Below, in pieces: positions 966 through 56,800 of a DNA stretch of 58,092 nucleotides. Under the pieces are notes generated by a model, which saw only the letters and a list, made by a program, of their open reading frames with translations, made no database searches and was not told the DNA's origin. The stretch is from Aplysia californica (taxonomy: Eukaryota): NCBI RefSeq assembly GCF_000002075.1, contig NW_004798057.1, positions 103,712-161,803 on the forward strand, given 5' to 3'. A program made the position numbers and the translations under genes. Every line of letters begins with the position of its first letter. Position 1 is the stretch's first letter.

Positions 966-1577
966 GCTAAATGAGAATTACAAAGTTTTATCTGACACTT
1001 TTGGCCGTTTTGAGTTACAAAGACTATCAACAACTAGGTCAGAAAACAAGTGCTCTGTCTTCTCTATCCAAATCGTAAGAATATTCGGAGCCGTTATTAA
1101 GATATTCAAATACTGCAATTGCATTCGAAAAATAAAAGCTTGACAAAGTATTGTGAAGCTGAACAATTTTAATTTTAGTTAGTTAAGTAGAGGTTTTACA
1201 GCGCTTACAACTGCATAAGGTCATATGAGCGCCAGAAGATTAGAGGTGCTACAAGAGAGCAACAAACATAAAAAAGAAGAAGCGGAGATACGGACGATAG
1301 ATCATGTTTCAAAGGAAAGAAAAAGCAAACCACACCAGAGCACCCGCGAACCACCCACTAAACAATTCTGAAGTCAAATTTCCCAAAACTAGGCCTACTG
1401 AGCAGATCGAACTTTGTAATTGTTTCTGAGGTAGTGAATTACGACCAACGCACACTGTGCTGTGGCTGTATGTATGTGACAAAATTGTCACAATCTCCCA
1501 CTCCCCAGGCGTGGTCATCCACCCAGACACACCTCCCGCTATTTTCTTCACCTTTCCCTCGCTCCTTGGGTGGCCTG

Positions 1578-1780
1578 CCTGATGGGTTCATCGAGGTGTG
1601 CACGTGTGCGTGTGTGTGTGGGGGGGGGGGGTAAGGGGTAAGGGGAAAGGGTCTGATGCTGGTCCAGCAAGGTGTGCGTGTGTGTGTGTGTGTGTGTGCG
1701 CGTGCGTGTGTTTGGGGGGGGGGGGATAAGGAGAAAGGTCCTAACGGGTTCATCGAGGTGCATGTGCGTGTGTGCGTGTT

Positions 1781-1834
<54 letters not shown>

Positions 1835-1950: not shown

Positions 1951-2164
1951 ACTTAATAAGCAGCAAGATGAGGGTGGTGGAGAGAGGGTAGAAAGGGTGG
2001 GCGGGGGGAGATAAGGGGGGAGGGGGTAAAATACTGCATTTGGCCTTGGGTTTGGTTTAGACTGAGGGTAAACTGTATTCTTCCCAGGAAGTTGGTACGG
2101 TACGAGTTTTACGGCGCTCGCAACTGCATAAGGCCGGTCATATAACTGAGCGCGCCCAAGAAGT

Positions 2165-7237: not shown

Positions 7238-7386
7238 TCAAGAGTCCTCCTCCTCATCGTCATCATCTTCAATATCATCGTCTTGTCCCTCCTCATCATC
7301 ATCATCCTCAGCACTATCCTCCATGTTCAGCCCTATGCTAGTCTCATCATCAGCCTTGTCGTCTGTGGGTTTTTCCTCGACTTTGG
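7238..7386 (-). CDS. MRTO4: MRTO4 terminal coding exon (acidic tail)
   Basis: Polypyrimidine tract plus CAG acceptor, in phase: [15 protein letters not shown]...[15 protein letters not shown] at 7222-7217. Confidence 0.82.
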
Positions 7387-7693
7387 CTGAGAAGAGAAAG
7401 CAGGAGATGTGGCATAAAATAACCCACTTCAAATCCACAATACAGACAAGTTGATGATGCCAATAAGGTCCTATTCACCTCACCCCCCGCCCCTCCAACT
7501 TAAGCACCAGGATGCCTTCAAAGCACTTTTTATGAAAAATGCATTAGCTTGTTGCAAACCAAGAAAGAGGAAATAGTATGAGAAGATTTTTTAGTACTTT
7601 CAGTTTTAGTAAGAGTTTTACGGCCCTTGCAGCACCACAAATCATTAAAGTAAAAGTGCTGGAGAGAGAGAGAGAGAGGGAGAGAGAGAGAGG

Positions 7694-7725
<32 letters not shown>

Positions 7726-10700
7726 GAAAGAGAGAAACAACACAACAGACGCAGCCGCAGATCACAAGACTCACGTTTGACCTTGACCCTGTCTGGCACG
7801 ATGTGCCGCGGCTGGTCGTCAAAGGTTTTCCACAGTCCTGAGTTGTTCCACACGCCCTCCATGGTGATGTGAAAGTCCGACATCTGATGGCCAAACAGTT
7901 TCTGTCGACAGAAAACAGGGAGTGGTTTTTAGTTTTTGTAAGAGTTTTACAGCATTTGCAACACATTATGGTCATATAAGTTCTGAAGAATAGAGGTATT
8001 TGTTACAAGAGATAAATAAACAGGTAAAAGGTTTAGTTTAGTTTAGTTTTAGAAAGAGTTTTACTGCACTTGCAACACAATAAGGTCATATATGAATGCA
8101 CAAGATTAGAGGTGTTACAAGAGAGTAACAAACACAAAAAAAGGAGGAGAGATCAGGACGATAGATCATGTTTGCTAGGAAAGAAGGAGCAAACCACACC
8201 AAAGCACCCGCCAACCACCCACAGGGAGTAATTACAATGCACAGCTCAAGAAGGGCACACTATCGTATCAACGTTATTAGAATGCCCAATGTTCCATACA
8301 ACAGCTGTGCATTTCTACTGTAACCCATCTAAAAACCCAATTCTCAATAAGACAGAGGTGACATTGTATTTCATACAATTTAAATACTATATTATACAAA
8401 ATGGTTGGGAGAGAGTTTTGTCATTGAAGCCATCTAATTATGCTCAATGAAATATAAAACAGAGGTGACATTTTATTGTAGTCATATAAAAAAAAAAAAA
8501 TACTCCATGAACATTCCATTCGATAATGGTAAGATTGATAGTTTCTTTGAAATGTCAATGTTGTGCAACACAGCAGTTGCAAGACAGTAGTCTGCCAGAA
8601 GATGCAAGTTCTCCCCCCCCCCCCCCCCTCATCCCCCACCAAGTAAAGGGATGGGGCTGAAATCACTCACCAGTATGCGGCATTGCTCGGGGCCAAGCGT
8701 CTGTCCTTTCTCACACACTGTGTGTTCCTTGAGCAGGTGGATCACGCCTGAAACACACAGACACAGCAGGAATGTAATTAATTACACACGCAAACAGCAC
8801 GCAAAATAGCACACAAAGACAGTCCAGGGTTCCTTCCATGAACTCCCCACCAAATTCAAGGAGGTTTCAAGGAGAAGTTTGTTTAATTCAAGGAGATTTG
8901 GTCAACAAGTTCATGCAGAAAGCCTATTTCCGATAGGCCTACACTTGTCCAAAAGGAATTGCAGTTTCGAATTTCCTTTAAAAAAATTGTTCCTATCATT
9001 CTGCGAAATTCAAAGAGATTTTCCTTGAATGCAAATTCAAGAAGTTTTCAAGGACTCACTGAATTCAAGGAGGCCGCAAGAACCCTGAGTAACTCACATC
9101 TCATCCGAAAAGGCGCTCAATGAAAACTGTACATAACCTGACCAGGTAACAACTTTGGGCAAACCAAAGACCTGATCTTGACTTGTTCAAGTAAAAACCC
9201 TCTATCTGCAGCTGGTCTGTTACATCTGTGGCCACAGCACAGAGACATATTCTCGTTCCCTCCCCCTCCTCCTCCTCCCCCACCCCCAAAACTTGCAGGG
9301 GAAGAGGAAATTGTCTATCCCCTATACTGATGGCAAAGACTTTCTCCCTGCCATGACGGGGATCAAGGACTGGTGATGGGTCTCATTTAAATATTGAGAA
9401 ATGCCTAAGCGTCTCAAACAGCTTCTCCCAATCCAGCCAACCGTACCTGCCCGTGGTGGTCCCTGTCCTCACTGACACGGCTCTGGCGAGTGGCGAGTTG
9501 TTGGCGCCAACAAACCAACCCCCCCGTTTCCTAGAGGGATTAAAACAACAGGATGAGAGCAGGTGTGGCCCCACAAGGCGCAGGAGGCAGAACCCACCGA
9601 TGCGTGGTAGACGCTATGCTCCTCACTAACACACCCCTACTCTCCCTTGAGTGGGTGTCTAATCTGCCTAACACCTCTACTTCTTTTATCAACACACCCT
9701 CCGTGGCTGAGAAGGTACCAGCCAGTTTGAGAGTGTCTGGGTGCAGGGGATGGACCGAGCGGAATGCCTGACTTGCTTTCTGACCGTGTACCTCTTAGTA
9801 AAGGCACAACGACCCAGGACGTGACGATCCAATGCCTTTTCCACTTGGCCGATACCTCATGAAAGATTAGAAAATTTTAGCCAGTAGCCTTTAGTGGCGG
9901 CTAATGGGCAACGTGAACCCTACCGGAATTACACCGTCACAGGGCAGTTAGGTCTTTCCAGTCTCTTGAAAACCCCTTGTTCCCTCCTATCCTCAACATG
10001 AATGGCCCCTTCTCAGGGTGGGCAGGCAGTCCACAGACACCCCAGTCCACAATGCCACAACCCTGCCATGACCACTATCTCCATATAAACAAACGAGGGA
10101 TTTACATTTCCCCGATCACACTACCTCAACAAATGAGACAGTGAATGAGTTAACTTGAATTATGCTCCCCCCAACCACTATCTTAACGAGTCAGTGAGTT
10201 ACACACTATTGCCCCCTCCCCCCCCCAAAAAAAAAACCTCTTAGATTTGGTTTACTAAGAGTTTTGCAGCACTTGCAACACAATTAGGTCATATAAGTGT
10301 CGAAGAACAGATGTGTTACAAAAGAGTATCGTACACGAAAAAGGAGGACAGATAAGTACGATAAGATGTTTGAAACGAAAGAAGGAGCAAACCACACCAG
10401 AGCCCCCGCCAACCAACCCAACAACCCACCCACTCCCCCAACCTCCCACCCCTCCAGTTTCACCTCTCTTGAGCTGTGTGGGCAGTCCCAGTTGTCGTAG
10501 CTGGGGTTCGATCGAGTGCGTGAACTCTGTGAGCGGGCCCTCCTCCAGCACCACCGTCTGGCTAGCCACTGTGCCTGAGCGGGCGTAGTCCGGGATGTAC
10601 AGCTCCTCAAAGTACCTGCAGGGGGAGTGGGGGGGAGAAGAGGGGGTGGGGGGGGGGGGGGGGGAGAAACAGTGCATGATTCTATGCAAATGAAAAAGGT

Positions 10701-13700
10701 ACATATGTATTATCTGTCCTAACTTTCTCACTTTGTTATACAGTCGAGTCCGCTTAAACCGGAGACCTTTAACCCTTTGAGCCCTGACCTCCTGAGGCTA
10801 CCGTGCCTCTGCCTGAGCTCCTGAGCGATATATTACTAATATCCATTTTTTTTAAAGAAAAAAACAAACAAACACAAATAGAATTTAAAAAAGCAAACAT
10901 CCATAAGACCATCAGAATCCATATCCCACTCAGGGTAGTCCTCATCATTACCAGCCTCTAATTCAGAAAGATTTTTTTTAAAATCAATAACATCCTGCGT
11001 GTTAAACACTGTTTTCCGTGTGCATTTTGTCCAAGGCTGGCCGGGTCGGAGATAAGGTCTCGCTCACCAATGTACCAGTACCAGTGGCTAGGCATATGGA
11101 CAGTTCCACGCACCATAAGGCACAAAGGGTTAATCCTAAAACAGCGGGAAACCAAAAGAAAATAAAACCCCTGATATTTTTTCCCTTCTTTTCAAGCAAC
11201 CTCTTTTTACTAAAAACCTGCCTACACGGGGAATTTATAACTTTTTCTTGCTAAATCCAACCAAAACTGGGCTCTCGGCTTGTTTCTCTCTCACACTGGA
11301 TTTCCTCTATGGATATGATTAAACATGATCATTCAAATCAAGCTGTTTAGTTTTAGTAGGAGTTTTATGGCACTTGCAACACAATAAGATCAAATAAGTG
11401 CCGCAGAGCAGATGTGTTACAAGGAGGAGGATGAGAGATAAGGACGACAGATGTTTGATAGGAAAGAAGGAGCTAACCACACCAGAGCATCCACCAGCCA
11501 ACCACCCACCGACAGATGTTTGATAGGAAAGAAGGAGCAAACCACACCAGACGTCCACAGCACCCACTAACCACGCTCTTGACAAAGACAAACAGTTACA
11601 GTACAAAAAGCAGCAGCAGCAAAAGATCACCCTTAGCCTTACACTTACTTTAAGACTTCCTTCTCTGTGGCGTTGGTGAACAGGAGACCCATCTGGCCCT
11701 GCAGGTGCTGTGTCAGTTTGTGCAGGTTCTCTCTGTACTCCTCCTCCGCTGTACGACCCAGGGCCAGCATCATCACTTTGTTCTTGCCGAAAAAAAATCT
11801 AAGAGAAAAAAAAAAAGATGTTTTAGTTTAGTTTCAGTAGAGGTTTTACGGCGCTTGCAACTGCATAAGGTTATATGAGCGCCAGAAGTTTAGAGGTGTT
11901 AAAAGAGAGTAACAAACATAAAAAAAGAAGAAGGGGGAGATAAGGACGATAGATGTTTGATAGGAAAGGAGTAAACCACACCAGAGCACCCACCAACCAC
12001 CCACAAAAAAAGAGATGTGTGAGCATTAACCTCACTGGGACAAGACATAAATTTCTCATATATGGAAATAGATACATCATGATTATAGGGGTAGCTTTTA
12101 CAATTTAAAGTTTGAAATAATAAAAGGCATGTTATACTTAAAGAATATGGCATGAATAGAAAATGGACAGTGTCGATTTTTGGCCAATATCTCCATTTGT
12201 GGATTGCGAGAAGTAACCCATTTTTGTCAGCACACTTCACATATACAGTGATTAAAAACAACAACAAAAACCCGACAAAATATAAGGAAGTATTGATTTT
12301 TACAAAAGTCATGCTTTGACAGAGAAGTGGAAATCACACATGGTCAAAACAAGATTAAAACAGATGATAGATGATACAGACAAAGCAGAGTTCCATTACA
12401 ATGAAATGTTGGATGAATGTTTTAATTACATACAGTGTGTGCCTAACAAGAAAACACAATTTCCCTGAACTTTTCCTTTGTGTTCTACATTAAGCAATGT
12501 GTGCGCAGAGTGTTTATAGAGTGTGTGTACAGATGATGCATCATATGTGCGCAGTGAATATATACAGAGAGTGTGTCTGTGTGTGTTTTGTGTGTGTGTG
12601 TGTATTTTGTGCGCGTGTACTGTGTGTGTTTTTGTGTGTTCGTGTTTCTTTGTGCATGCACATGTGAGTGTGTGTTTGTGTGTGTGTGTGTGTGTATGTT
12701 TGTGTGTGCGTGTGTGTGTGTGTGCAGAACATGTACAACATAAGCACTGATGCAGATTGAGTGCAGTGTGGACATACTGAGAGTACAGTGTGCAGTGTGT
12801 GTAAACAGTGTGTTCGCAGTATGTGTAAAATGTGTGTCCCATGTGTGCAGTGGCTGCTTGGCATGTACAGTGTACGTGTGTACAATGCGCACAACTTGTG
12901 AGTATGTGTGCTATGTGTGCGTGCAGTGTGTGTTGAGGGTGCTTTTTGCTCAGAGTGTGTGTGTGTATACAAAGAACACGAAGTGTGAATGTGTGTGCAA
13001 ATGTGTGCTGCATGTGTGCAATGAGTGCAGCAGGTGCACAGAGTGCGTGTTGTGAGTGCGCTGTGTTTGTGTGGGTGAGTGCGTAATATGAACAAAGAGT
13101 GAGCTGTGTGTGTGTGTGTACATCTGCCAGGACACTGGGCCTACCTGCTGTGATTCCATTCTTGTCTGATCTCTTTGAGCTGCACATTACGCATGTTGTG
13201 AACTGAAAATGTGAAGATTCTAGCATACTGGTCCGCTGTTTCTCGTATCTGTCGACACCAAGACCACAAAAAAAGCTTTGACTTGAGATACAGAAAACAA
13301 AATCCAACTAGCATCAGCTACTAAAAAGAGTAAGGGATGGGGAAAAAATGAAATGGTCAGAAACAACAAAGGCACTGCAAGTTTTACTTTGTTTTAGTAA
13401 ATAAAGAGTTTTAAGGCACTTGCAACATATGATAATTAGGTCATGTAAGTGCCAAAGACTAAAAGTGCTACAAGCGAGTAACGAACACAAATAAAGAAAG
13501 ATAAAAATAACGGGTATTTGATAGGAAAGAAGGAGCAAACTACACAAAATAAAAGCACCCAGCAACCATCCGCAAAAGACAATTAAAAGTGGTGTTGTCC
13601 AAAAACCTGCACAAGAGAGAAACAAATATAATCATTATTGAATAATTTTCTGAGAGACACAACTGACAGCGGAACAAACCAACCTACACCAGAGCCAACG

Positions 13701-29480: not shown

Positions 29481-29511
<31 letters not shown>

Positions 29512-36857: not shown

Positions 36858-37049
36858 ATATGACCTTATTGTGTTGCAAGTGCTGTAAAACTAATAAAAA
36901 ATTTTTTTTTTTGAGAACTACCGGTACTAGCCTACTGTTAGTAAATTAAAAGTACATCATGTGTACGTACAGAACAGATAGGGTACTTGAAATATTTTAA
37001 AATAATTTTTCAATACTGGATTTATTTATTAGTAATTGGCCATCCTGTC

Positions 37050-41129: not shown

Positions 41130-41165
<36 letters not shown>

Positions 41166-41508
41166 TTCTATAAGGTCTACTCCTTTTTTAAGTACAGTGT
41201 ACGAGTTTTACCATGCTTGCAACACAATAATCTCGTAAGTGTTAAAGATCAGAGGTGTTACAAAAGTAAAAAAGTAAAAGACACACAAAAAAGGAAAGAA
41301 GGAGCAAACCACACCAGAACACCCGCCAACCCCCACTATTTAGATCTAAAGATAAAAATTATTAATTTGAAAAGAACAACAATGATAAAAGTCAACGTCA
41401 TAAAAAAATATTTAATAACATCTGGGGACAGTCAGCCTTGTTGGCCAGAAATGTCCAGAACAGTGAACACAAAATATGAACAATATCATAATATATTACA
41501 TTTCATAT

Positions 41509-41961: not shown

Positions 41962-43913
41962 ATATAAAACGTCTGTACAACTAAATGAGATTACGTCTGG
42001 ACAGAAGCATCTTCCTAGGTATTTCTGCAGAAAAATGCAACAAAGAGATGAAAATCTTGAGTTTCGAATTGCATCAATGCATACAGTCGACTTTGGACGA
42101 GTTGATGTGATTTCGTCGGGGTGTGAAAAAAGATCAACTCATCCGAAGTTCGACTTAATTAACCGTTGAGATCTGTAAAGAAGAAGAGGAGCGCCTGGGA
42201 CCGGAGGAAAAGATAAATTTCACCGAAGATCAACACAAGTTGAGTCCATTGTATTATAAAATATAAAATTATAGTTTTGTACATGTACATGTGTGTGCGT
42301 GTGTGAGAGAGAGAAGGGGGGCGGGGGAGAAGGGGGGCGGGGAAGAATTGCATGAGAAAAGTCTCCCGGAATAGCCGATTCTGCTATCAACCAAGCAATT
42401 TACTGAGTTGCAATAGATGACAGGCAGTCGGAAGTGGTCGCTTGGAAAGCCACGTTGCTGAGTGCTCTTCCTTTTAATAAATATATAACTATCATCAAAC
42501 AGATTCCATTCCCTATTCCCGACATTTCAAATTGGGCTTTTAGTACAGTGAGTCCGTTTTTCTACCCCTCCCAAACACACACACCCATTCAATGTCTTTG
42601 TATTCAATATATTTCATAACCCCAGTCGGGGAATTCTTCATAAGAAAGTCGATAACACGTTATCGGCCACAGTGACCCCCATCCCCAAGGGAAGTCACCA
42701 AATAATATATCAAATAAATGAGATGATTGTGTACCTCCCTCCCTCCCTTTGCTCAGGGTCACATAAACGCACACTCCATTATAAACACATGCCATGGACC
42801 CCCCCCCCCCCCCCCCCCCCCAGCACTGTGCGTTTAGGCAGAGACTACTGTATGCATGTTATGAGTGTCAGATAGTATTATTATACATGTACAGTATCTT
42901 ATTAAATCTTCCCTACTGGAATGATTTCATATCCACTTCCTCTTCAAATGAAAAAAAAAAGTTTCTTATACTTAAAGACGGTATTGGTACCGCCCTATCT
43001 GTCATTAAACCAGACACATTTTAATTTTATGAACTTGCAAAAGTGTTTTAGTTTTAGTAGAGGTTTTAAGACGCTCGCAACTGCATAAGGTCATATGGGC
43101 GCCAAGGGGTGGATGTCAACAGAGAAGTCCTTACAGGGAATCAGACTTACTCTGCTCACCTCTCTAGCTTGCAACAGCACAAAGTCTGCTTCGACTATCA
43201 AGGCACCCCGGAAATAGAGGGTCACAAGAGAGTGACAAACATAAAAAAGAAGTAGAGGAAAATTGACAATAGTAAGGATTAGGAAAGAAAAAGCAGCAGT
43301 TCCCTGTTGTAGATCAGGCACAGTTATGAGTAGATGAATCAGCCCATTTACAATTCTACAGTGCATGATCGAGAATTGTCCCCCCTTTGGGAATGGCCTA
43401 AAGACACTTCAGTCAGTGGCACCACCCCAGGTGGGCTTGCTGTGCATGTAACAACAGTGCAAACACATGTTAAGTAGAAGTAGAAGGAGTCAGAAAATTA
43501 CATTTTATGACAAGGATTATCCATCAATAATTTCTCAACTAAAAGAAAAAGAAATATCACTTTGGAAAAAGTTCTCCTGACAATATGAAGCAACTCGGGG
43601 CAAAAGAAAAAGTGCCATTTTTCGAAAAACAAAAATGTTTCCATTGGTGAAGAGAGCTGACCAAGGCTTCAACTTCAAGTCTGAGGTTCACAAGCCACAG
43701 TCAACGGAACAGATTATCAATATCATGGACGTTTGTGAAAGGAATTGAGAGTCACAACGCTGAGCCGGTTACAAGCATGCTTCCCGGGAAGCTGAGAATG
43801 TTTCTGAGTCTTCTATGGTCTGCTGGGGTAATAATATAGCGCAAAGAGCTAGCTTTCGAGTGGGGACATGCGCTATACAAAAGCTATTTATTGTTTATTA
43901 TTATCATTAAGTA

Positions 43914-44770: not shown

Positions 44771-44780
44771 CACGACGGAC

Positions 44781-44898: not shown

Positions 44899-47800
44899 CT
44901 GTGAGTGGACCAACGGTGGGGGACATTAGTACTTGGTTAAGTACGGTAATATATGTTTTTTATAGTAGAGGGTTTTATGGCGCTCGCAACTGCATAAGGT
45001 CATATGAGTGCCAAGGGGTGGGAGTCAACAGAGAAGTCTTTACAGGGAATCAGACTTAGACAGCTCACCTCTCTAGCTTCAACAGCACAAGGACTGCTTC
45101 GACTATCAAGGCACCCTGGAAAAAGCGGGTCACAAGAGAGCGATAAACATACAAAAGAAGTAGAAGACAATGACAATAGTAAGGATCAGGAAAGAAAAAG
45201 GAGCAGTTCTCTGTTTTAGATCAGGCACAGTTATGAGAGTGACAGGAATCAGCCCATTTACAATTCTACTATGCTTGAACGAGAAATGTCCCCCCCTTTG
45301 GGATTGGCCTAAAGACACTACAGTCAGTGGCACTGCCCCGGGGGGTAAGTACGGTAAGTGGATGACCGGTGGGAACATTAGCACATAGCAACAGAAACAC
45401 TTGAAACAGTGAGAGCATTAGTATACAGCAGGAACAACTGGGAACATCAGAACATAGGAACAGCAAAAACAATGGGAACATGAGTTCAGAACAACAGAAA
45501 CAGTGAGAATATTAGTACATAACAGGAAAAATTGGGAACATCAGTACTTTAGTATTAGTACATGATAGCCTACCAAGTGGACGAACACAGTGGGAACATG
45601 AGTACATAGCAAAATAAACAGTAGTGGGAACATCAGTAGGCCTACATGACAACAGTCAGGAAAAACTGGGAACAGAAACAGTGAGAGTATAGCAGTGGGA
45701 ACAACAGTACATAGCAAGTGGACGAATAGTGTGTACATCAGTACATAGCAAACAGAGCAGTCGACTCACTGCGGTGTGTACATGGCATTGTTGACGACCC
45801 ACAGACATGCATGCACATACACAGGGACACACACACACACACACAGGCAATTAGTGTGTTCACAGACAGACACATACACACGTTGTCAGCGTGTTCACAG
45901 ACAAACAGAGCACAGTCGACTCACTGAGGCGTGTCTGTGGCTTTGTTGACGTCCCACAGACGCACACAGCAGTCGGCGCCACCCGACGCCAGCACGGAGC
46001 TATTCTCGTCAAAGGCCAGGGCATAGACCGTGTCGCTGTGACCTCGCAGCTCCTTCATGACGCGGCCCGTGCGCAGGTCCCACACGCGCAGACGGCGGTC
46101 CTCACCTGAGAGTCAGTTTCAGTTTTAGTAAGTGTGTTTTACGGCACTTGCAACACAATAAGGTCATATAATATAAGTGCCGAATATTAGAGATGTTACA
46201 AGAGAGTAACAAACACTAAAAAAAAAAGGAGGAGAGATCAGGACGATAGATTATAATAATAGGACAGAAAGAGCAAACCACACCAGAGCACCCACCAACC
46301 ACCCGCTGAGAGTCAAATACATGCGCATGCAAAAAGAAAGACAGAAATAACAGAGGGGAGGATAAGAAACAGGGCCTACAAAAAGCACACTCCAACCCCC
46401 TCCCCTCTTTGAAAATATCCAAATTCGTCTTTAAAGCAAAAACTTTGTTTTCTTGGAAACAACATTCTGTTGTTCGGCTCTCCTGTCAAAACTGCGTCAT
46501 ATATTACTGTACTTTAAAAAAATGACGGCATCCACGCTACACTACCGCCTACACCACCCACCCACACTCACCTGCCGAGGCCAACAGCTTCCCGTCGGGG
46601 GAGAAGGCCAGAGCCAGCACCGAGCCCCGGTGACCTTGTAGCAGACGCACAGAGCGGGCCTCCGTGAGGCTCCAGAAGCGCACGGTCTTGTCTCCCGAGC
46701 CAGAGGCCAGGTAGCTGTTGTTGGGGTGGAACTCCACGCACTGGAAAACAAAAAACAAAATAAAAAACAGAAATAAAAAAATCCAACAAAACAGTAATAC
46801 AAAACAACACAATTAGCATCTCCTTTATCATTCTTTGTCCATCAAGGAAATTGTTAATCTCGCAATCCAAGAACGGAGATATCGGCTGAAAATCGACACA
46901 GAGGTCATTATTTATAGATTTTCAACTGACGCCATTTTCTTCAAGTCAACCGTGTCTTTCACTACTTTCAGTATTCCACACTTACAAATTGTACAAACTC
47001 CACCTATAAAATTGATGTATGAATTTCCATTAGGCTGGAATCCGAGAAGTAACTCATTTTGTCAGCACACCTCCCATATGGTCGCTTTTAAGCACAAGGG
47101 GGCTATCCCGAAAAATGCTATTTTGAGAAAATCGAAGGTAAAGTTTTTGACTCTTATTCAGCTTCTTTAAAAGACAAGGAGAGTTTTCTCTATAACCAAA
47201 CAAATATACACACCAAAGAAACCAAACTTCTCCTATAGGTAGGACAGTGCCCACTTTTGGTGTAGGTCATGATTTCTGGAAACCCCCAAAATCTGGGTTA
47301 GCCCACCTGTCCTTTTAAAAGCGACCATGTATTCGGCCAAGCCGAGGAGACTCACATCTACGTCCATGGTGTGCCCCACGTAGGAGCGCAGCGGGAACGT
47401 CCTCTCCGTGGTCCACAGTTTGGCCGTCGTGTCGTGGGAGCTGCTGGCAAACCACGTGTCTGTTGAGCTGGACACACATAAGGCAGGGGAGAAAAAATAA
47501 CTAATAGTAAAAGTAATTATAGTAATAATAGATAGCATATTATGTATACCGTAATTTCCTGTTGAACAGCAAAAACTCTGTGCGCTTTACTCCAGCAGAC
47601 CTGATAGCATTTTGAAACACTCTCAACTTCCTGGGAAGCTTACACAGTACAGTGCAAGCTGCTATTTATAGGCACAAAAATAGTAAGATACTGACAAGAT
47701 CTTTTGCTGTCTACCGATGGGTGGAAAAAGGGAAAGAAATTTTCACCTACAAGTGGCGCCCATTGCTTGTTCACTCTTATCTGTTCACGCGAAAAAAATT

Positions 47801-50800
47801 CTAGCTCATTTATTAATTTCCCTTCTATTCGCACGAAACTTTGCAACAAGCACAGTGGAGACCCACCTGACACTGACGTCCCAGACAGCTGAACTATGAC
47901 CTTTGTAGAGGCACACGTTGCTCTGGGTGGCCATGTCCCACAACCTCACTGCGGAGAACGTACACACACATAGACAAGGCAAGATTAAACACAATATTTT
48001 TAGGTACCAGAAACTAAATTTTCAAAGTAATTGTATGCCAAATTTATCAGTTCCATTTGAAAGGCCTATATCCACTGAGCATTTTGGTACCATTCTTTAA
48101 CTTCTCAGTCAATTTTTAAGAAAATGGTAGTTGTTTAAAATTTGATCAAATTTGTTAAAGTCAGTCACTGGCTGCAACCCCATGTTTGACAGACAATAAA
48201 AGAGTACCAAGAGCACTAAACATCTCCACATTAACTGAGTACAATCACTATAACAAATATATGGAGCCTAATTTTTTTCAAGACTGTGAGATCAGTACTT
48301 TATCGCCTCAAACACGATGATCTGTCGTTATTTCGACAAAAACACAGAGCGTTGACCCGGCCGGCGCCGCACCGGGCCCCGCGGCGAGCGAGTCGGCTCT
48401 ATACTGTAGTGTACCCCGCGTGCGGGGTCACATGCTTTCTGAGTCTCGCGGAAGGATTGATAAAAAATAATTCCAAGTTGATTACTTTATTTTAATAGGA
48501 AATAAGCTGATCTTTTATTAAATATATTTTATAAGCCGGTATTTTACATAAGTGATCTTTAAACATTTTAACAGTATTTTTAAAAGCTTTTTATTTAAAC
48601 GCCAAAGGCAAAACACATACCACTGGAAAGCCCGTTTTAAGCTCTACAGTTCTCCGCCAATGAAAAGACGGTATTTAATCATTCTTCGTTCCGCGAAGCA
48701 TTTGAATGAACCCGTGTCAATTTTTCAACCGGCCGACCACGCATTCCGACTGCGAGGGGCTTCGCTTTCGTCGGCGATTCTCCAGCTCCTACTAATCGGA
48801 CATATAAACAACTTACACCATTGTAACGAGGAAAAGCGGAACTTTTACAAGGTGTAAGGCATTTGGTGTTTTATAGCGAAAGAGCAAAGAAACAGCGATC
48901 GGAATTACCCCGATTTCACCGATACCACGCGGTCGGAAGGCCGCGAGTGCCCGCGAGGCCGTGTTTACGCTACCTAATATTTTTGTAGTTTTCTATTCGG
49001 TTATTTTTACGGCACTTGCAATACAATTAAATCATATATAAGCGTTGAGCATTAGAGATGTTACATTTACATATGAGTTACAAACACAAAAGAAGGAAAG
49101 ATGAGGACGTTAGATGTTAGTTAAGAAAGAAGGAGCAAGCCACAACAGAGAGAGCACCCACCTAACAAACACACCAATATATTTTAATTTTTTTTTTTTT
49201 TAGATAAACGGGGTAAACATAGCCATGAACATATAATATGGGGAAAAGGGTTACCGTACACATCTAGCTGTAGCTGTAAGTGTTTAATGGCTTCATCGAC
49301 ATAAACTGGATCACTGTCACACTACCTGAACTGAATGTTTATTTGACATTTGNNNNNNNNNNNNNNNNNNNNNNNNNNNNNNNNNNNNNNNNNNNNNNNN
49401 NNNNNNNNNNNNNNNNNNNNNNNNNNNNNNNNNNNNNNNNNNNNNNNNNNNNNNNNNNNNNNNNNNNNNNNNNNNNNNNNNNNNNNNNNNNNNNNNNNNN
49501 NNNNNNNNNNNNNNNNNNNNNNNNNNNNNNNGACCAGAGGAATCCTCGGAGCAGGACAACAGGTGACTATTGGAGTTGTACAGGAAGCGACTTCTGTACA
49601 CGGGGCCTCGGTGACCCACCAGCTTGGCCGTCTCTGTGCTCTGGCCACTTCTGAAACAAAATGCGAACTTACATCATGAAAAACAGTTCAGTTTAGTCTA
49701 GTTTTTCACTCAAGTAGACAGTAGAACATTGACAAGATAAGTAACATTTTGTGCTGTGAAAGTAAAAAAGCATGGGGCAGTGCATGGCGAAAAACACAGG
49801 GGAGAAAGTAAAGAAGTAGGACCTGCCAATGGTGTTCTTTAACTGTCTCAGGAAACACTTTTCAGCTGCCCAGTGAGAGATTTGTTCTATAGGGTAAGGG
49901 TGCAAGCGCTGTGCCAGAACCACAACCTAGAGGACAAGGTGTCCCAATTTCGGGACACACACGCACAAACATGCACACACACGCATATATGCATGCAAAT
50001 GTGCACACCCATTTACACACACACTCTTCCCTCCCACATCCTCTCTTCCACACACATCTGTGCACATAACCATGATAATATAATAGTATGCTAGCACTCA
50101 CAAACGGGCTCACAGTCATGTGTATAATAAAAATAAAAAGTAATCAAAAACAGCAATATAACTTAAAAGCACAGTGAGGCAACGTGGTGAAATCAGGCGC
50201 TCGTCAAAATAATGACAGTGAAGAAAATGGCATTTTTCCGCAGGTTCGGGAATTTTTATCGAATTTTTTTTTTTTTTCAGCTCAATACCTTCCATATCCA
50301 TCAAAGAACACATAAACTAAAGGCATAAATAGTGTAAATTCACTGTTCCCAGAATCTCAAACTAAGGACATAACTAAACTTTGGCGATCACTTTCTAGCT
50401 TGTTTTACCTCTGAGACCAGGGGACCCCCACCTATTTCAATCGCCAAAATCTCAACCTGTATAAAATTTAAGATAAATGGATATTTTTTCCATCGAAAGC
50501 AAGACAAATGAAAAAGCTTTACGGCGATACCAATAACTCAACATGCCCAAAAATAGACAAGCACCTGATTCCACTGCTTTGTGACACATATAATTACGGT
50601 TCCCCAGACCCATTAGAAACGCTGACCTTTTGTTCATCCTCTCCTTGATCTCGTCCTCGCTAAACAGGATGTGGTCCGCCCCTAAGACGATGCGACTGAC
50701 GTCCGTGTCTGCGGGCGCGCGGCGGAACACGTCGGGCTCGAGGTTCCAAATGGAGATGCTGGCGTCCTCGAAACACCCGCTCAGCTTCTTCTTGTCCGGG

Positions 50801-53800
50801 GAGATGGTGGAGGAACACAGGCTGAAAGCCACACAATCACACGACTCATACAGTAAACAGGATAATATTCGCGATGACCGCATTATTGATATATTTAAAT
50901 GTAAGTTTAGTATAGTTTTAGTAGAGGTTTTACGGCGCTCGCAACTGCATAAGGTCATTATGAGAGCCAGAAGATAGAGTTATAAGGACGATAGATGTTT
51001 TGATAGGAAAGAAGAAGCAAACCACCCCAGAGCACCCGCCAACCACCCACATTTAAATGTTAACATTCCCAACAATCAAGTGACTCACACAGTGAGAGGT
51101 AATGTTCCCCACGGTATTGTTTTAGTTACAGTTTTACGGCACTTGCAACACAATCAGGTCATATAAGTGCCAAAGATTAGAGTGAGGTGTTACCTGAGAG
51201 TAACAAACAAATTATTCCGAAGAATTCTTAAATAACTTAAAAACTAAAATTATTTTTAAAGTCCAGAAATAAAATAAGTACTATAAACCCAGTGAACAAG
51301 CTAAAACGTCTGCACTGTCAGACGAAAAAATTACATGTACACAGTGTGCTCCACCCCCCCCACTCACCCTTTAGTTCAGTTTTAGTTTTAGTAAGAGTTT
51401 TACGGCACTTGCAACACGATAAGGTCATATAAGTGCCGAAGATTAGAGGTGTTACAAGAGAGTAACAAACATAAAAAAGAAGGAGGAGAGATCAGGACGA
51501 TAGATGTTTGATAGGAAAGAAGGAGCAAACCACACCAGAGCACCCGCCAACCACCCACCCACTCACCCTTGGTAGGTGTTGAGAAACGTGAAGAAACAGA
51601 TAGAAGGCAGGCAGGGAGGTAATCCTCGCACAGCCGAGATGGCCGCGCTCAGCTCTTCCTCCAGACTCTGTTCCTGCTGCGGCTGCTCCCCCTGGCTAGC
51701 CTCCGTCTTCACGGTGACGTCTGTTGGCGTGTCGCCCACAGAGGTCGTCTCTGTGTCCATGTCGGAGAAAGGCTGCAGCTCTAGCTGCCCGCTGGACTCG
51801 GACTTGGTGACTGGAGGTATGGGGAGGGGATACAGGATGTTTGTCAAACTTCCCTGCCGTTATTTCTAAAAGTACACTATATATTTGTGTGTGTCGTATG
51901 CCTAGAGAAAGGTCCCAGATGTTGGAAATTTTTGTTTTTGTTTTAGTAAGGTTTTACGGTCCTCGCAACTGCCTAAGGTCATATGAGCGCCAAGGGGTGG
52001 ATGTCAACAGAGAAATCCAAATGGGGAATCAGGCTTACTCTGATCTCCTCTCTAGCCTCAACAGCACAAAGTCTGCTTCGACTATCAAGGAATCCCCGGA
52101 AATAGCAATTCACAAGAGTGACAAACATACATAAGAGGTAGAGGAAAATGATGATAGTAAGGATGAGGAGAGAAAAAGCAGCAGTTCATTGATAATCAGC
52201 CCATTTACAATTCTACTGTGCGTAAGAACATGTTAATATCCCCCCTCTGGGAATGGCCTACACACAACTTCGGTCAGTAGTACTGCCCTGGTGGGGAGAG
52301 GACACAGAAGATGTTTGTCAAACTGCCCTGCCGTTATTTCTATAAGAGCAATATATATGTGTGTTGCCTGCCTGGAGAAAGGACCCAGTTGTCACAATCT
52401 AGTAGCAAATTCAATGTTGAACACGCTGATTAAAAGAAAAAATTCAAATATCTTGAGTAGCTTTTAAAGATATGCCACATTTTGTAAACTAAAATGTTTC
52501 TAAAAATCTGTTAACAAATCAAATCTTAAATTTCTTTAAGAAAAACAAAAACAACCCCCCCCCCCCAACTCAAACAAACCCTGAAATAAAAAACTAATAC
52601 CAAAATCATTCCAAACAATTCTTCAATAACACAAATTTGAAATCTATTTATGTACCATAAGTACATCTGGGGTTCTTCAAATTACCCCCCCCCCCAAAAA
52701 AAAAATCCAACTAAACCCCAGAGGGCTCAAATTTTATTGAGAGTACAAAGCAGTTCTTGGAAAGAAAAGAGCCTGAAGCACCTACCATTAACTTTGACAC
52801 ATTGGTTGAAGACCTGCAACATGATCATGCTGTCATCAGTCTGAAAAAACAAAAAGAAAACAAAAAACATATCTTTGACATTTTTGATTTCTGTAATTGC
52901 TATTTTAAGTTTATGTAAGAGTTTTACAGGACCTGCAACACGATAAGGGCATAAATAAGCTCCAGAGATTAGATGTGTTACAAGAATGAATGGTAAACAA
53001 AACATATAATTATCAGACCCACTCCCCCCCCCCCTCCCAAAAGAAGATGGCTCTAAAAAAAACCATCCTCCTGCTCTGAAATTTTTTTTTTAAACAAACC
53101 AAATTTTTATTTTTATACAGACAATATAAACAATTTAAAACAAAAAATTAAAGTCAGAAAGTAAAGCAGCTTGTCAGTGTGGTCGTCTATCTGTACCCAT
53201 GTGTTGTAGTATGAGTGTAAGAAGGAGCCAACGAGCAGCAGTAGAAAGGCTGCAGAAAGAGTCAGGAGCCCAGAGGAGGGGGTGGGGGCAGAAAGTGGAG
53301 ATGAAAGCAGAAGACAGAACATTGCTAGAGAGCAGGAAAGGAGGTGAAAGGGGACAATTTTAGAGAAGAAGATTTTTCCCGTCACTACACGGATTCGGAC
53401 CCGCGACCTTTGAATGAGAGGCCAACACCTTAATCTCTAGGCCACGAGAGCCCCCATAGTATGTGTGTGTCAGTGATGTCATCTTTCTGTACCAATGTGT
53501 TGTAGCATGTGTTTGTCAGAGAACACCGTACCTTGAGAAAATGCATCAGATAGTCCATAGTGTCCGGCTCCACGCTCAGCAAGAACCTGTGCTCCCTGCA
53601 AGAGATTATAAAACGACAGTTAATTCAGTCAAGTTTGGTAAGAATTTTACAGCACTTACTGCATAAGGTCCTATTAGTGTGGGTTGTAAGCGTTTTTTTT
53701 ATGCCCCACTAAAAACAATTACTGCAATAGTTCCCTTTTGTTATAATTGTTTTGATTCTGAGAGAGAAAGAGAGAGAGAGACAGAGAAAGAGAGAGAGAG

Positions 53801-56800
53801 ACAGAGAGAAGGAGAGAGGTAAAGAGAGAGGGGGGGAGGGAATGAGAGATGGAGAGGGAAAGAGACAGAGAGAGAAAAAGAGAGAGAGAGAGAGCCAATG
53901 ACGGAGAGAGTTGCTCCAGTCTTACCTGTATTCTGTGACTTCTTTGTTGGACATCACCTCAGCCTTGGTCTCCAGCTTCTTCAACAGTTTCGTTAACGAC
54001 TGACTTTTCTCGTCGGTGAACATTTCTCCGTGTCTCTCGTGGAATTTCTGAGCTGAGAAAAAGAAACGGCAAAATGTTCATGCTCAACTCAATCCTGCCA
54101 TAGGCTTTGTTGTGAAAACAGACAAAAGGGCATAATAACTCATAACAAAATCAAAAAGTAAAAAAAAAATCAACCATCTCAAAAGCAACCACACATGACA
54201 AAAATATAAAATAAGCTGCAAAACACAGATTAAAGATTTGGGTTTATTTCAAGTAGTAGTCAATGTTTCTGCGCCCAATTGTCTGGATGGTCCACTGATC
54301 AGTTCTATCTTTGTCTTCTTCGTGTGACTCAACAGCTAAATCAAAATCTACATCCTCATCAATGATGGATTTCTTCTTTAGACCTGGCATTAAATCCTGT
54401 TTCATTCAAACCTCCCCTTTGGTATAATAACCATGTACCTTGTTACTACGGGAGAGACCAATAATATGTAGACATGAAAGCTTGACTCGTGAGGAAAAGG
54501 AGTTAAAGAAATACAGTAAAAACGCGGCATAATGCACAGGTACGGTTCAAAACGTAGCGTCGGCTGTAATGTTCACTTTAATGTTAATTAATAAGCTGCG
54601 TTCATGATTTAAGCTATACACCAAGGCGTGGGTCGTCCTGTGTGGTTTGCTCCTTCTTTCCAAACATCTGGGGTCCTTATCTCTTCTCCTTCTGTTTTAT
54701 GTTTGTTACTCTCTTGTAACACCTCTAATCTTCGGCACTTATATGACCTTATTGTGTTGCAAGTGCCGTAAAACTCTTACTAAAACTTAAACTAATACCC
54801 CTAGGCGTGATACAGACCTGGAACCTTCTGTCCGTTGCACAACATCTCGAGGTAGGTGTGCACAAACATCGGTAGCAGGAGTGGCTGGAGCTTTGGATGA
54901 TGGGGGCTGGCTGCTCCAAGAATGAAATGCTTGAATCTGAAGAGCAACAACACAGTTTGAGATTAATAAAAAATCTAAAGATATGGGATAAGCAGGCCAC
55001 AATTTACAACAAGCAGAAAGAAGAGAAGACAGAACAAAGGCGCACCTATAAATTCACTACTCTTTTAACTGTAAAAGATATGTGAACCCTTGTAAAAAGA
55101 AAAAGTGCAATTTCATTCAAATGTAACATTTCAAAAAATTTATTGTACATTTCAAGCAATCCTTACAGAAAGAAAAGACTTAGACTTTAGAATCCTATTA
55201 CGAAAACTCAAAATACTTTAGTCAGTATAAAAAACAGTATCTTTGAAATTGCAATGCGGCTGTCTGATCAAATCATGTGTGTTGCAAGCAATCCACTTTA
55301 GTCTGTTTGGTTACTTTTCACACAAGAGACAAAACACTAGTCTTTGTTGTGTTGTTCTTATCAACATTCATGAAAAGCCAGAAAATTCTAAGCCTTGACC
55401 ATAGAATTAAACTGCATTTTGGTGATGATGATGTCAAAAAGCGCACCTTTGATAGTGCTTTGAAAGGGTGTAAAAATGGAATATTATCAAAATTTGGACA
55501 TAAAGTGGATTGCACGCAACAGCGATAAGATAAAATTCTTGATGACTAGCCTTGTAAACTGCTGGTCACATGCTGTGGCATCCCCCGATATGCTGGTGAG
55601 GGCCAGAGTGTTCTCTACACTTGTCCGAGACTTGGCACGACGACGGACAGATAGCTCTGTTACTGTCTGTTCTCGACGGCCATCTTTTCTAGAGGGCATT
55701 TCAGATTCCTGAAAGTTAGAAGATTTTATGTAATCAGTGTAAACAAGACTCAATATATATATATTTTACCATGAAAAACAGTACACAAGCATAAAATTTA
55801 TAATATGGATAAGGCATGTTCATTGATACAAAATCTGAAAAGCAGTCAGATTGATTTTACCCCACTGCACAGGATATTAAATCTTGATCACTATTCTTAT
55901 AATGAAAAATGGTAGTCTGTAGAACAGATTTTAGAAGGTAGTCATAAATTTCTTATATTGACCCTATCGAGTCACATCTCGATCAATCTAACTTTTAACT
56001 ATCCAACCGTTCAAGTACATGGAGGCTCTTTACTCAGCCTCAACCAAGAGCAAGTTGAAAGTGGACAGCCACATCAGTCTCAGACATTCACTGCAAGCCG
56101 AAATTTAGACTAGATTCTAGGGCGCTCTTTGGAAATTGCTTTCCCGTTCCAACTGATAATTTGCCATGTAAACGTGAAGATTGTGTGTTTTTAAAAAAAT
56201 ATTATTTTTGCAAGGCCCCCCCTCCCCCCGATAGCGGGGCGGCTTGAAACCCCCAGGCCCACTGTTATAATGGCTAGTGCGCATTAACACACACATGAAC
56301 ATGGTGGGTCCATCAAAGTCCAATCCAGCCAAAATAAATTTTTAATACAAAACTTAGCCTGTATGACCACTTTTGTCCTTTGCAATTGTGGTCTATTTGG
56401 TTGTTTTTGGTTGTGGCAGGGGGTTAGGCCTAGCTATTGTATTGTTTGGCTGAAAGTGTGAGTCTCAGTTCAGTTGTATTGTTTGCAAGTTTATAAACTG
56501 TAGAGGTTAGATTTTAGAGGGGAGAGCTGTAGCAAGGCAGAGGAGGCCTGCTGAGATTTCGGATGGAGAAAAGGCTAGTTTGAGCCTCGGTTTGTTTCTC
56601 TGTGTAACGTGTGAGATTCCAACGCATCGGGGCTCCATCGTTGAGGAAAGGATCACCACCCAGAGAGAAACAGGTTTGGCTGAGCCCTGCTGTAGGCGCA
56701 GGCAGACAGAAGGTAAGTGTTAAACATTGGTTTATATTCAAGTAACAACAGCAATCACTTTTGTTTCTTTTGTAAACAAACGGGAAGGCAATTTCCAAAG

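What the first reader, a model, noticed from the sequence alone, without database searches (positions are those of the whole stretch)
1170..54795. Short retroelement family that follows host transcription direction and avoids one gene entirely
Seen: I counted about 26 copies of families A and B, about 23 of them on the minus strand. MRTO4 (minus) has a sense copy in each of introns 2-7. TAF5L (minus) has about 9 sense copies in introns plus 5 downstream, and only one antisense copy (about 54625-54795). The other two plus-strand copies (about 36252 and 37695) lie just downstream of the plus-strand 14-3-3 gene, so orientation flips where the two genes converge. I found no copy in the ~15 kb 14-3-3 transcription unit, although its intron 1 accepts many DNA transposons. 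Known: mammalian L1 and LTR elements in introns are usually biased antisense, the opposite of this pattern. Inference: transcription-coupled targeting, or selection for a sense-strand RNA function.
Basis: partly seen in the sequence, partly recalled or inferred. Interest (0 to 1): 0.85.

Follow-up and report, generated by a model that had tools for sequence, protein, structure and literature searches.

The report
Short retroposons aligned with gene direction
A very abundant family of short copy-and-paste DNA elements in this animal genome points the same way as the gene it sits in about five times out of six, the reverse of the mammalian pattern. The likeliest reason is that its opposite strand carries splice-site look-alikes that genes cannot tolerate.

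Summary
The orientation pattern is real and holds beyond this window. The scan had already reported it on other pieces of this genome (s1-680717, s1-725189 and others), and I reach the same result independently.

**In the window:** 25 insertion events of families A and B, 21 on the minus strand and 4 on the plus strand. Inside the three genes, 18 events are sense and 1 is antisense (this count includes relatives E and D).

**In an unselected test set:** 11 myosin genes (152 kb) gave 62 sense and 11 antisense hits, or 45:9 after merging neighbours (p = 7e-7). A DNA-transposon control family showed no such bias (3:7).

**Without annotation:** exact-match copies on the two largest contigs agree in orientation in 19 of 22 pairs under 5 kb apart. 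Agreement falls to chance beyond 20 kb. The domains are therefore gene-sized, not replication-sized.

**"Avoids one gene entirely" does not hold.** The 14-3-3 unit contains one sense fragment, and another gene has no copy in 18.5 kb.

**Cause, not settled.** I favour selection against antisense copies. The sense strand has one AG in 181 nt and ends in a branch-site-like TACTAA tail. The antisense strand opens with TTTTAG repeats and GTAAG. Antisense survivors have mostly lost that end. Sense tails sit just before exons five times more often than chance predicts. Transcription-coupled integration remains a live rival.

The parts
7241..13317 (-). MRTO4-like gene, mapped exons (about 13144-13317, 11648-11800, 10440-10600, 8680-8750, 7780-7905, 7241-7400)
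   Evidence: Pfam Ribosomal_L10 and RL10P_insert on minus-strand ORFs; ORF listing
21154..35732 (+). 14-3-3 transcription unit, from the first coding exon to the poly(A) site; the last exon and 3' UTR span 32338-35732
   Evidence: Pfam 14-3-3; stranded poly(A)+ reads, splice junction at 32338 and poly(A) tails after 35732
45924..54962 (-). TAF5L-like gene, mapped exons (WD40 exons 45924-46106, about 46552-46740, 47300-47480, 47830-47960; NTD2 exon about 54830-54930)
   Evidence: Pfam WD40 and TFIID_NTD2; ORF listing
1175..1358 (-). family A copy, full length
   Evidence: nhmmer E = 5e-47
2096..2161 (-). 3' end fragment shared by families A, B and D
   Evidence: nhmmer E = 2e-7
7598..7665 (-). 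family A 3' fragment, MRTO4 intron, sense
7928..8222 (-). family A full copy plus a tandem 3' part, MRTO4 intron, sense. TSD is ACTCCCT and the tail ends 23 nt before the acceptor AG
10245..10418 (-). family A copy, MRTO4 intron, sense, about 40 nt downstream of the donor site
11344..11576 (-). family A copy plus an adjacent 5' fragment, MRTO4 intron, sense
11824..12004 (-). family A copy, MRTO4 intron, sense. TSD TCTTTTTTT lies in the polypyrimidine tract and the tail ends 20 nt before the AG
13377..13572 (-). family A copy, MRTO4 intron, sense
26429..26528 (+). family A 5' fragment (profile positions 3-112) inside the large 14-3-3 intron, sense.
   Evidence: nhmmer E = 7e-11
36098..36230 (+). 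family E copy, 0.4 kb past the 14-3-3 poly(A) site
   Evidence: nhmmer E = 2e-6; poly(A) site
36255..36899 (+). one family A copy split by a MITE insertion at 36382-36848, past the 14-3-3 poly(A) site
   Evidence: reads from other copies skip 36381 to 36858
37696..37759 (+). family A 5' fragment, 2 kb past the 14-3-3 poly(A) site
39836..40135 (-). family A full copy plus a tandem 3' part, downstream of the TAF5L stop codon
40401..40659 (-). family B copy, downstream of TAF5L
   Evidence: nhmmer E = 8e-85
41198..41334 (-). family A copy, downstream of TAF5L
43036..43333 (-). family B copy, downstream of TAF5L
44943..45244 (-). family B copy, 0.7 kb downstream of the TAF5L stop codon
46114..46305 (-). 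family A copy, TAF5L intron, sense. TSD ACTCTCA is the end of the acceptor site and the tail ends 8 nt before the AG
46333..46403 (-). family E fragment, TAF5L intron, sense
49003..49168 (-). family A copy, TAF5L intron, sense
49703..49838 (-). family E copy, TAF5L intron, sense
50908..51050 (-). A/B-type copy with an internal deletion, TAF5L intron, sense
51115..51210 (-). family A 3' part, TAF5L intron, sense
51379..51558 (-). youngest family A copy (98% to the profile consensus), TAF5L intron, sense. The 12-nt TSD AAGGGTGAGTGG duplicates the donor site
51923..52201 (-). family B copy, TAF5L intron, sense
52904..53001 (-). family A 3' part, TAF5L intron, sense
53216..53455 (-). family D (tRNA-like head) 5' part, TAF5L intron, sense
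53630..53679 (-). family A 3' fragment, weak match, TAF5L intron, sense
   Evidence: nhmmer E = 7e-5
54628..54793 (+). the only antisense copy inside a gene in this window: family A, TAF5L intron, 93% to the consensus, tail intact

Best explanation
**What the elements are.** Families A (about 180 nt) and B (about 300 nt) are non-autonomous non-LTR retroposons. Their relatives are E (about 150 nt) and the tRNA-headed D (about 500 nt).
- A, B and D share a 3' stem-loop and an (ACTAAA)n-type tail. E has a diverged version.
- All insert with 6-15 nt target-site duplications.

**What is shown.** Their orientation follows the transcription direction of the host gene, about 83-85% sense in unselected genes and about 90% in the youngest copies. 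This holds genome-wide, in domains the size of genes.

**What I infer as the cause.** Insertion itself is roughly unoriented, and copies that land antisense in a transcribed region are removed by purifying selection.
- The sense strand is harmless to splicing. It is pyrimidine-rich, has a single AG in 181 nt, and ends in a branch-site-like TACTAA(A)C tail.
- The antisense strand looks like an exon. It is purine-rich with 25 AGs, opens with two TTTT(N)AG acceptor-like motifs, and carries a GTAAG donor core.
- Sense copies are therefore tolerated even inside the branch-point and polypyrimidine zone, where their tail probably serves as the branch site. Antisense copies persist mainly after losing the offending end.
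- A large population size would make even weak mis-splicing costs effective. This last point is an assumption and was not measured.
For: **The bias is real.**
- Window genes: 18 sense and 1 antisense.
- 11 myosin genes chosen only by Pfam hits: 62:11 hits, 45:9 clusters, p = 7e-7. Eight genes have more sense than antisense copies and one has the reverse.
- Neighbours of 29 young copies on 29 contigs: 40 same orientation, 11 opposite.
- Exact-25-mer copies on contigs C1 and C2: 19:3 under 5 kb, 31:11 at 5-20 kb, 53:57 at 20-100 kb.
- The whole genome is strand-neutral, 6809 forward and 6590 reverse.
- A MITE control family in the same sequences shows 3:7.

**Evidence for selection.**
- Strand asymmetry of splice signals in the A profile. 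In real copies, 56 of 70 open their antisense strand with TTTT(N)AG, and the first 140 nt hold a mean of 1.0 AG against about 8 expected.
- Genic antisense copies keep their 3' end in 4 of 10 cases against 41 of 50 sense copies (p = 0.011). In the myosin set alone it is 3/9 against 29/34 (p = 0.004). Every new copy starts with that end, so its absence is a later loss.
- Sense tails end within 61 nt upstream of exon starts 7 times against 1.43 expected (p = 0.0006). No antisense end does. In 8 of 10 cases the tail-to-AG distance is 8-23 nt.
- The target sites show only a weak motif, and their base composition equals the background. A skewed target cannot give a 5:1 ratio.

**Precedent.** Human Alu elements show a local sense excess 20-200 bp from exons, attributed to the cryptic acceptor on antisense Alu (PMC3088655).
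Against: - The bias is already 19:2 in the youngest class (at least 88% identity to the profile). It does not grow with age: the myosin set suggests the opposite (p = 0.04), and the neighbour set shows no trend.
- In this window three plus-strand events lie 0.4-2 kb past the mapped 14-3-3 poly(A) site, where RNA depth in unique sequence is zero. Five minus-strand events lie downstream of the TAF5L stop codon. Selection on splicing should be weak there. The sample is small, and the locus was chosen because of this pattern.
- Overall co-orientation of 78-86% among close neighbours is higher than uniform insertion followed by purging would give (about 62% by my rough estimate). It requires insertion to favour genes as well.
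- The 3'-end-loss test rests on 10 antisense copies, and one of them abuts an assembly gap.
- Enrichment before acceptors needs more than tolerance: either targeting or positive selection.
Confidence: 0.5

Rival explanations
1. The orientation is set at integration and coupled to transcription. First-strand nicking and priming succeed more often on the template strand of a transcribed gene, or intermediates on the other strand are aborted by a transcription-linked repair pathway. New copies are then born sense.
For: - The youngest copies are already 19:2 sense, and exact-match copies co-orient in 19 of 22 pairs under 5 kb.
- Orientation follows the upstream gene past the 14-3-3 poly(A) site and downstream of TAF5L, flipping between 37.8 and 39.8 kb where the two genes converge.
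- Exact-match D copies, which share the same 3' end, agree with the nearest A copy 9 times out of 11.
- Precedent: the orientation bias of human L1 arises partly at insertion through transcription-coupled nucleotide excision repair, although in the opposite direction (PMC5717806).
Against: - It does not predict the splice-signal asymmetry of the two strands, the loss of the 3' end in antisense survivors, or the crowding of sense tails before acceptors.
- In the myosin genes family D is 2 sense to 3 antisense, although n is small.
- The evidence from beyond the poly(A) site is one locus that was picked because of this pattern.
- The known repair mechanism acts against sense insertions, so a different mechanism would be needed here.
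Confidence: 0.3
2. Sense copies are kept by positive selection for what their RNA strand does in the pre-mRNA. They would donate a branch site and an AG-free pyrimidine tract to acceptors, or more generally help intron definition.
For: - Sense tails are enriched five-fold just upstream of exon starts.
- The distance from tail to AG is 8-23 nt, which puts the TACTAA motif where a branch point is needed.
- Three such cases are in this window, at 46114, 11824 and 7928.
Against: - Only about one sense copy in seven sits near an acceptor. Most lie deep in introns or past gene ends, where no such role is apparent.
- Use of the tails as branch points is untested.
- An earlier follow-up in this scan reported no aiming at those spots genome-wide (s1-716523, not checked here).
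Confidence: 0.1
3. Orientation tracks replication-fork direction, local base skew or a strand-asymmetric target motif, and only appears to follow genes.
For: - Contig C1 as a whole is skewed, 50 minus to 23 plus, and pairs 0.1-2 Mb apart are 56-58% co-oriented.
- Gene sense strands have more T than A (0.33 against 0.28) after masking the elements.
Against: - Co-orientation falls to 48% at 20-100 kb.
- The window flips twice within 58 kb, exactly at gene boundaries.
- Plus-strand and minus-strand genes both show the sense excess, 32:3 and 13:6.
- The target-site motif is weak and target composition equals the background.
Confidence: 0.04
4. The pattern is chance, local duplication, or copies seeding co-oriented copies nearby.
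For: - Tandem partial copies exist, for example 7928-8222 and 39836-40135.
- This window was chosen because of the pattern.
Against: - Unselected genes give 45:9 after merging neighbours.
- Each copy has its own target-site duplication.
- Copies in one locus are no more alike than copies from different loci, 0.195 against 0.168 mean distance.
Confidence: 0.02

Closest known systems
Orientation bias of intronic retroelements in mammals (L1 and LTR antisense excess; Alu sense excess 20-200 bp from exons; PMC3088655, PMC5717806)
   Same: Intronic retroelements are not randomly oriented relative to the host gene. For Alu near exons the excess is sense, and it is attributed to a cryptic acceptor on the antisense strand. 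That is the same logic I propose here.
   Different: - Here the sense excess is about 5:1 overall and about 9:1 in young copies. It holds throughout gene bodies and for several families.
- In mammals the overall bias is antisense or weak.
- Mammalian transposable elements are depleted near exons, whereas these are enriched about five-fold just before acceptors.
SINEs and LINE-promoter (LP) short retroposons of molluscs (Matetovici et al. 2016, PMC4758252; bivalve HCD SINEs, PMC11481361)
   Same: Short non-coding retroposons with target-site duplications, a stem-loop 3' region and a simple-repeat tail. Heads, bodies and tails are shuffled between families: D has a tRNA-like head on the same tail as A and B. 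They accumulate in genic regions.
   Different: - A, B and E have no detectable Pol III head.
- Their partner LINE and their promoter are unknown.
- Neither paper analyses orientation relative to genes: the words orientation and intron are absent or incidental in both.
Introner elements (transposons that create new spliceosomal introns); named from my own knowledge, not checked in a paper here
   Same: Mobile elements whose sequence fits the splicing code and whose target-site duplications can coincide with splice sites (51379 at a donor, 46114 at an acceptor).
   Different: - The copies here are parts of larger, pre-existing introns, not whole introns.
- They are retroposons rather than DNA transposons.
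- No intron gain was shown.

Membership tests
Non-LTR retroposon mobilised by target-primed reverse transcription (SINE in the broad sense) | Variable target-site duplications flanking each copy, and a defined 3' end with a simple-repeat tail | tested here: met
   TSDs of 6-15 nt found for 29 of 57 full-length copies. Sharp common 5' end GTGGGTGG. (ACTAAA)n tail
Non-LTR retroposon mobilised by target-primed reverse transcription (SINE in the broad sense) | Short, non-coding, high copy number | tested here: met
   Lengths of 150-500 nt. 66,597 genomic matches to a 25-mer of the A head with up to 3 mismatches, and 22,969 for a D 25-mer
Non-LTR retroposon mobilised by target-primed reverse transcription (SINE in the broad sense) | 3' region shared with an autonomous partner LINE | not tested
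   The partner LINE was not identified.
Classical Pol III SINE (tRNA-, 5S- or 7SL-derived head) | Head derived from a small Pol III RNA, with A and B boxes | tested here: not met
   Families A, B and E: no Rfam match at E up to 1 on a young A copy, no ARAGORN hit, and no Rfam hit in the window at the gathering threshold. Family D: a full-length match to the tRNA model at 23.2 bits, below the 29-bit threshold, with GGTTCGAATCC present. D fits this class; A, B and E do not
LP-SINE (short retroposon with a LINE-derived 5' end; PMC4758252) | 5' end homologous to a LINE 5' UTR or promoter | not tested
   No LINE sequence from this genome was in hand
Introner element | The element, with its target-site duplication, makes up a whole new intron | tested here: not met
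   All copies in the window lie within longer introns between conserved exons
Mammalian-type antisense orientation bias | Excess of antisense over sense copies inside genes | tested here: not met
   62 sense to 11 antisense in unselected genes

The most novel reading that the evidence does not exclude
These promoter-less elements are intron mimics.
- Their RNA begins with a GU donor-like GTGGGT and ends in a branch-site-like TACTAA tail.
- It would be produced from host pre-mRNA in which sense copies sit.
- Integration would be coupled to transcription or splicing of the target gene, so that copies are born sense.
- They would preferentially land in the branch-point zone, where they take over as the working branch site.

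This would be a retroposon that lives by the splicing code and remodels acceptor sites across the genome.
Probability: 0.12. Interest if true: 0.85.

Novelty: new variant of a known kind. Interest (0 to 1): 0.6.

Why it matters
Orientation bias of intronic transposable elements is a standard read-out of how mobile DNA and genes constrain each other, and the textbook pattern from mammals is antisense or weak. Here an abundant, recently active retroposon superfamily shows a strong bias in the opposite direction, together with crowding at splice acceptors, where mammalian elements are depleted.

If selection is the cause, this is an unusually clean natural case of an element whose sequence has become invisible to the spliceosome on one strand. 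It offers a way to measure how efficiently weak splicing costs are purged in a large population.

If integration is the cause, it would be a new form of transcription-coupled retrotransposition.

Either way it affects gene annotation in this genome: element orientation predicts gene strand, and element tails mark likely branch sites. In five full-text searches of open-access papers I found no description of it.

Tried and rejected
- **More own-genome DNA.** I did not try to obtain the same DNA through another tool. The independent gene sample is therefore limited to 152 kb of myosin genes.
- **Age trend.** In the myosin set young copies are more biased (19:2 against 16:10, p = 0.04). The neighbour set shows no trend (19:5 against 21:6), and the older family E is 27:2. 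I draw no conclusion from age.
- **Local hopping within a gene.** Rejected. Copies in one locus are not closer relatives of each other.
- **Skewed target motif.** Rejected as the cause.
- **Density in genes against the genome.** An exact 25-mer gives 2 matches observed against 2.2 expected in 152 kb, too few to tell depletion from enrichment.
- **Pattern search with mismatches.** Its listing drops rows unevenly by strand (one search compared). I used only the exact-match listing for co-orientation. The D listing came from the same mismatch mode and may be thinned in the same way.
- **Family D as a discriminator.** It was 2 sense to 3 antisense in the myosin genes (3:3 counting the sense copy in TAF5L) but 9:2 co-oriented with A on C1 and C2. 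Inconclusive.
- **Element reads in poly(A)+ RNA.** They fall on both strands, 174:72 over the body and 113:194 over the 3' part. They come from many loci, so I did not use them.
- **Spliced gene models.** Not joined. Exons were searched one by one by reference.
- **Organism.** I did not verify the name.
Full report
**What is there.**
The window is G000:C787:103712-161803, in a 927-Mb, 4332-contig animal genome.

- Family A is about 180 nt. It has a sharp 5' end GTGGGTGGTTGG, a pyrimidine-rich body, a stem-loop, and an (ACTAAA)n tail.
- Family B is about 300 nt. It has the same 3' 60 nt and an extra internal segment.
- Copies are flanked by individual target-site duplications of 6-15 nt, so they are independent retropositions.
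- ARAGORN and Rfam find no small-RNA head in A.

I found two relatives along the way.

- Family E is about 150 nt, with an A-like head and a (CAAA)n tail.
- Family D is about 500 nt. Its head matches the whole Rfam tRNA model at 23.2 bits, below the threshold, and it carries the same 3' stem-loop.

The A head is very abundant. An exact 25-mer occurs 6809 times forward and 6590 times reverse, and 66,597 times with up to 3 mismatches. The reversed control pattern gives 0-1 matches.

**Checking the observation.**
Profile searches give 30 A/B hits in the window, 25 on the minus strand and 5 on the plus strand. After merging tandem pieces and the copy at 36255-36899, which a MITE splits, that is 25 events: 21 minus and 4 plus.

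Gene strands were confirmed exon by exon with Pfam.

- 14-3-3 is on the plus strand.
- Ribosomal_L10 plus RL10P_insert (MRTO4-like) is on the minus strand.
- TFIID_NTD2 plus WD40 (TAF5L-like) is on the minus strand.

Six consecutive MRTO4 introns each hold a sense copy. TAF5L holds 8 sense A/B events, 2 E and 1 D, and one antisense A copy at 54628-54793. Inside the three genes the count is 18 sense to 1 antisense.

**Assembly gaps.**
The gaps do not affect this count.

- 34988-35087 is bridged by an RNA contig with nothing between the two sides.
- 49353-49531 lies in a TAF5L intron. Collinear minus-strand exons and minus-strand copies lie on both sides.
- The other two gaps touch no copy and no exon.
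- No gap was filled.

**The 14-3-3 gene.**
Stranded poly(A)+ reads place the last exon at 32338-35732, with poly(A) tails added after 35732. The unit from 21154 to 35732 holds one sense A fragment at 26429-26528, so it is not empty.

One copy in 14.6 kb is low for this window. It is not unusual against the unselected density of 0.31 per kb (Poisson p about 0.06), and one myosin gene has none in 18.5 kb. I therefore do not regard the avoidance as a feature.

**Is the bias more than this window?**
The window was picked for its pattern, so I built an unselected sample.

- Pfam Myosin_head hits in the genome's six-frame translation gave collinear exon series. These fix the strand and gene-body span of 11 genes. 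I fetched 152,401 bases of them.
- A/B hits there are 35 sense to 13 antisense. With family E added and D tail pieces removed, the count is 62:11.
- After merging same-strand neighbours closer than 100 nt it is 45:9 (p = 7e-7).
- Eight genes have more sense copies, one has more antisense copies, one is tied and one has none.
- Plus-strand genes show 32:3 and minus-strand genes 13:6.
- As a control, a TIR-bearing MITE family in the same sequences shows 3:7. Two further unrelated repeat families show 3:6 and 3:2.

**Annotation-free tests.**
- Around 29 young A copies on 29 contigs, other copies within 1.5 kb are co-oriented 40:11.
- Exact-25-mer copies listed for contigs C1 and C2 are co-oriented 19:3 under 5 kb, 31:11 at 5-20 kb and 53:57 at 20-100 kb.

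Orientation is therefore organised in gene-sized domains. This result, together with the two flips at gene boundaries inside 58 kb, argues against replication direction.

A weak long-range component remains. C1 is 50 minus to 23 plus overall, and pairs 0.1-2 Mb apart are 56-58% co-oriented. I cannot explain this.

**Cause: evidence for selection.**
- Target sites show only weak preferences: an A-rich start of the duplication and purines after it. Their composition equals the background, so a skewed target cannot give 5:1.
- Copies in one locus are not closer relatives of one another, so local re-insertion is not the cause.
- The two strands differ sharply in splice signals. The sense strand of the A profile is 64% pyrimidine, has one AG in 181 nt, and has TACTAA at position 166. 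The antisense strand has 25 AGs, TTTT(N)AG at positions 3 and 9, and GTAAG at position 14.
- In real copies, 56 of 70 start their antisense strand with TTTT(N)AG.
- Antisense copies inside genes retain their 3' end in 4 of 10 cases, against 41 of 50 sense copies (p = 0.011). In the myosin set alone it is 3/9 against 29/34 (p = 0.004). Reverse transcription starts at that end, so its absence is a later loss. This is what survivorship under selection would leave.
- Sense tails end within 61 nt upstream of known exon starts 7 times against 1.43 expected (p = 0.0006, permutation within loci). Four control configurations show nothing.
- In 8 of 10 cases, three of them in this window, the tail ends 8-23 nt before the acceptor AG. 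The natural branch point is then displaced, and the TACTAA tail sits where one is needed.

Mammalian elements are depleted in exactly that zone. The one mammalian sense excess, Alu at 20-200 bp from exons, is attributed to the cryptic acceptor of antisense Alu (PMC3088655).

**Cause: evidence for integration coupling.**
- The bias is already 19:2 in copies at least 88% identical to the profile, and it does not increase with age.
- In this window three plus-strand events (36098, 36255-36899, 37696) lie 0.4-2 kb past the 14-3-3 poly(A) site, in sequence with zero unique RNA depth. Five minus-strand events lie downstream of the TAF5L stop codon. The flip falls between 37.8 and 39.8 kb.
- Close-neighbour co-orientation of about 80% exceeds what uniform insertion followed by purging would give by my rough estimate.
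- A human precedent exists for orientation being set at insertion by transcription-coupled repair, though in the opposite direction (PMC5717806).

**Verdict.**
- I put selection against antisense copies at about 0.5.
- Integration coupling is at about 0.3.
- Positive selection for branch-site donation is at about 0.1.
- The remaining explanations together are below 0.1.

**Relation to earlier notes of this scan.**
After reaching these results I found that other windows of the same genome had given the same two findings. These are a sense bias of about nine in ten (s1-680717, s1-725189) and a three- to five-fold crowding before acceptors with a branch-site-like tail (s1-725172, s1-728371, s1-725186, s1-717340). 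One follow-up reported no aiming genome-wide (s1-716523). My counts agree with them.

- the mapped poly(A) site, with oriented copies beyond it;
- the decay of co-orientation with distance;
- the 3'-end loss in antisense survivors;
- the MITE control;
- the finding that the 14-3-3 gap is not special.

**Literature.**
Searches found no description of this bias in molluscs. The two mollusc SINE surveys do not analyse orientation.

Noticed in passing
window 34101-34302: Inside the 14-3-3 3' UTR, stranded poly(A)+ reads pile up on the opposite strand (depth 309 and 208 in two runs), and 573 and 379 molecules begin exactly at 34302. This could be an antisense transcript end or internal priming on the T-rich stretch.
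   Followed up: no
window 41504-41945, 50174-50574, 36382-36848: A MITE-like DNA transposon of about 440 nt with terminal inverted repeats (GGTGAAATCAGGCGCTCGTC ... GACGAGCGCCTGATTCCACC). One copy has inserted into a family A copy. The family shows no gene-strand bias (3:7) and served as a control.
   Followed up: partly
window 53216-53455 and 208-297; L019:965-1484; L047:5655-6179: Family D, a SINE of about 500 nt with a degenerate tRNA head (Rfam tRNA 23.2 bits, B box GGTTCGAATCC) and the same 3' stem-loop as A and B. About 23,000 genomic matches to a 25-mer with up to 3 mismatches.
   Followed up: partly
window 130-218, 36098-36230, 46333-46403, 49703-49838; many copies in L042 and L043: Family E, an older relative of A of about 150 nt with a (CAAA)n tail. 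It is 27 sense to 2 antisense in myosin genes and often lies in tandem runs, ten hits in one 6-kb stretch.
   Followed up: partly
G000 contig C1, whole length (5.9 Mb): Exact-match A copies are 50 minus to 23 plus on this contig, with a stretch of 16 minus out of 17 over 1.8 Mb followed by six plus in a row. This is a weak megabase-scale component on top of the gene-scale pattern. It could reflect clusters of co-oriented genes or replication polarity.
   Followed up: no
L037 and L038 (G000:C413:100166-118684): A myosin gene with three successive exons matching the same profile positions (about 120-152), apparently mutually exclusive alternative exons. It has no A, B, E or D copy in 18.5 kb.
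   Followed up: no
L033:703-848 and 2601-2778; L049:2898-3217: The antisense A and E copies in two myosin genes lie together and agree with each other in orientation. This might mark a nested or antisense transcription unit in those introns.
   Followed up: no
window 10419-10460: A 40-nt G-rich run (GGAGGGGTGGGAGGTTGGGGGAGTGGGTGGG) lies between the MRTO4 donor site and the head of the A copy. It looks like a repeated or extended element head.
   Followed up: no
window 6612-6914 (minus strand): A 101-codon open frame rich in acidic and serine residues lies just downstream of MRTO4 on the same strand. It may be an exon of a further gene, which would make the minus-strand copies at 1175 and 2096 genic as well.
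   Followed up: no
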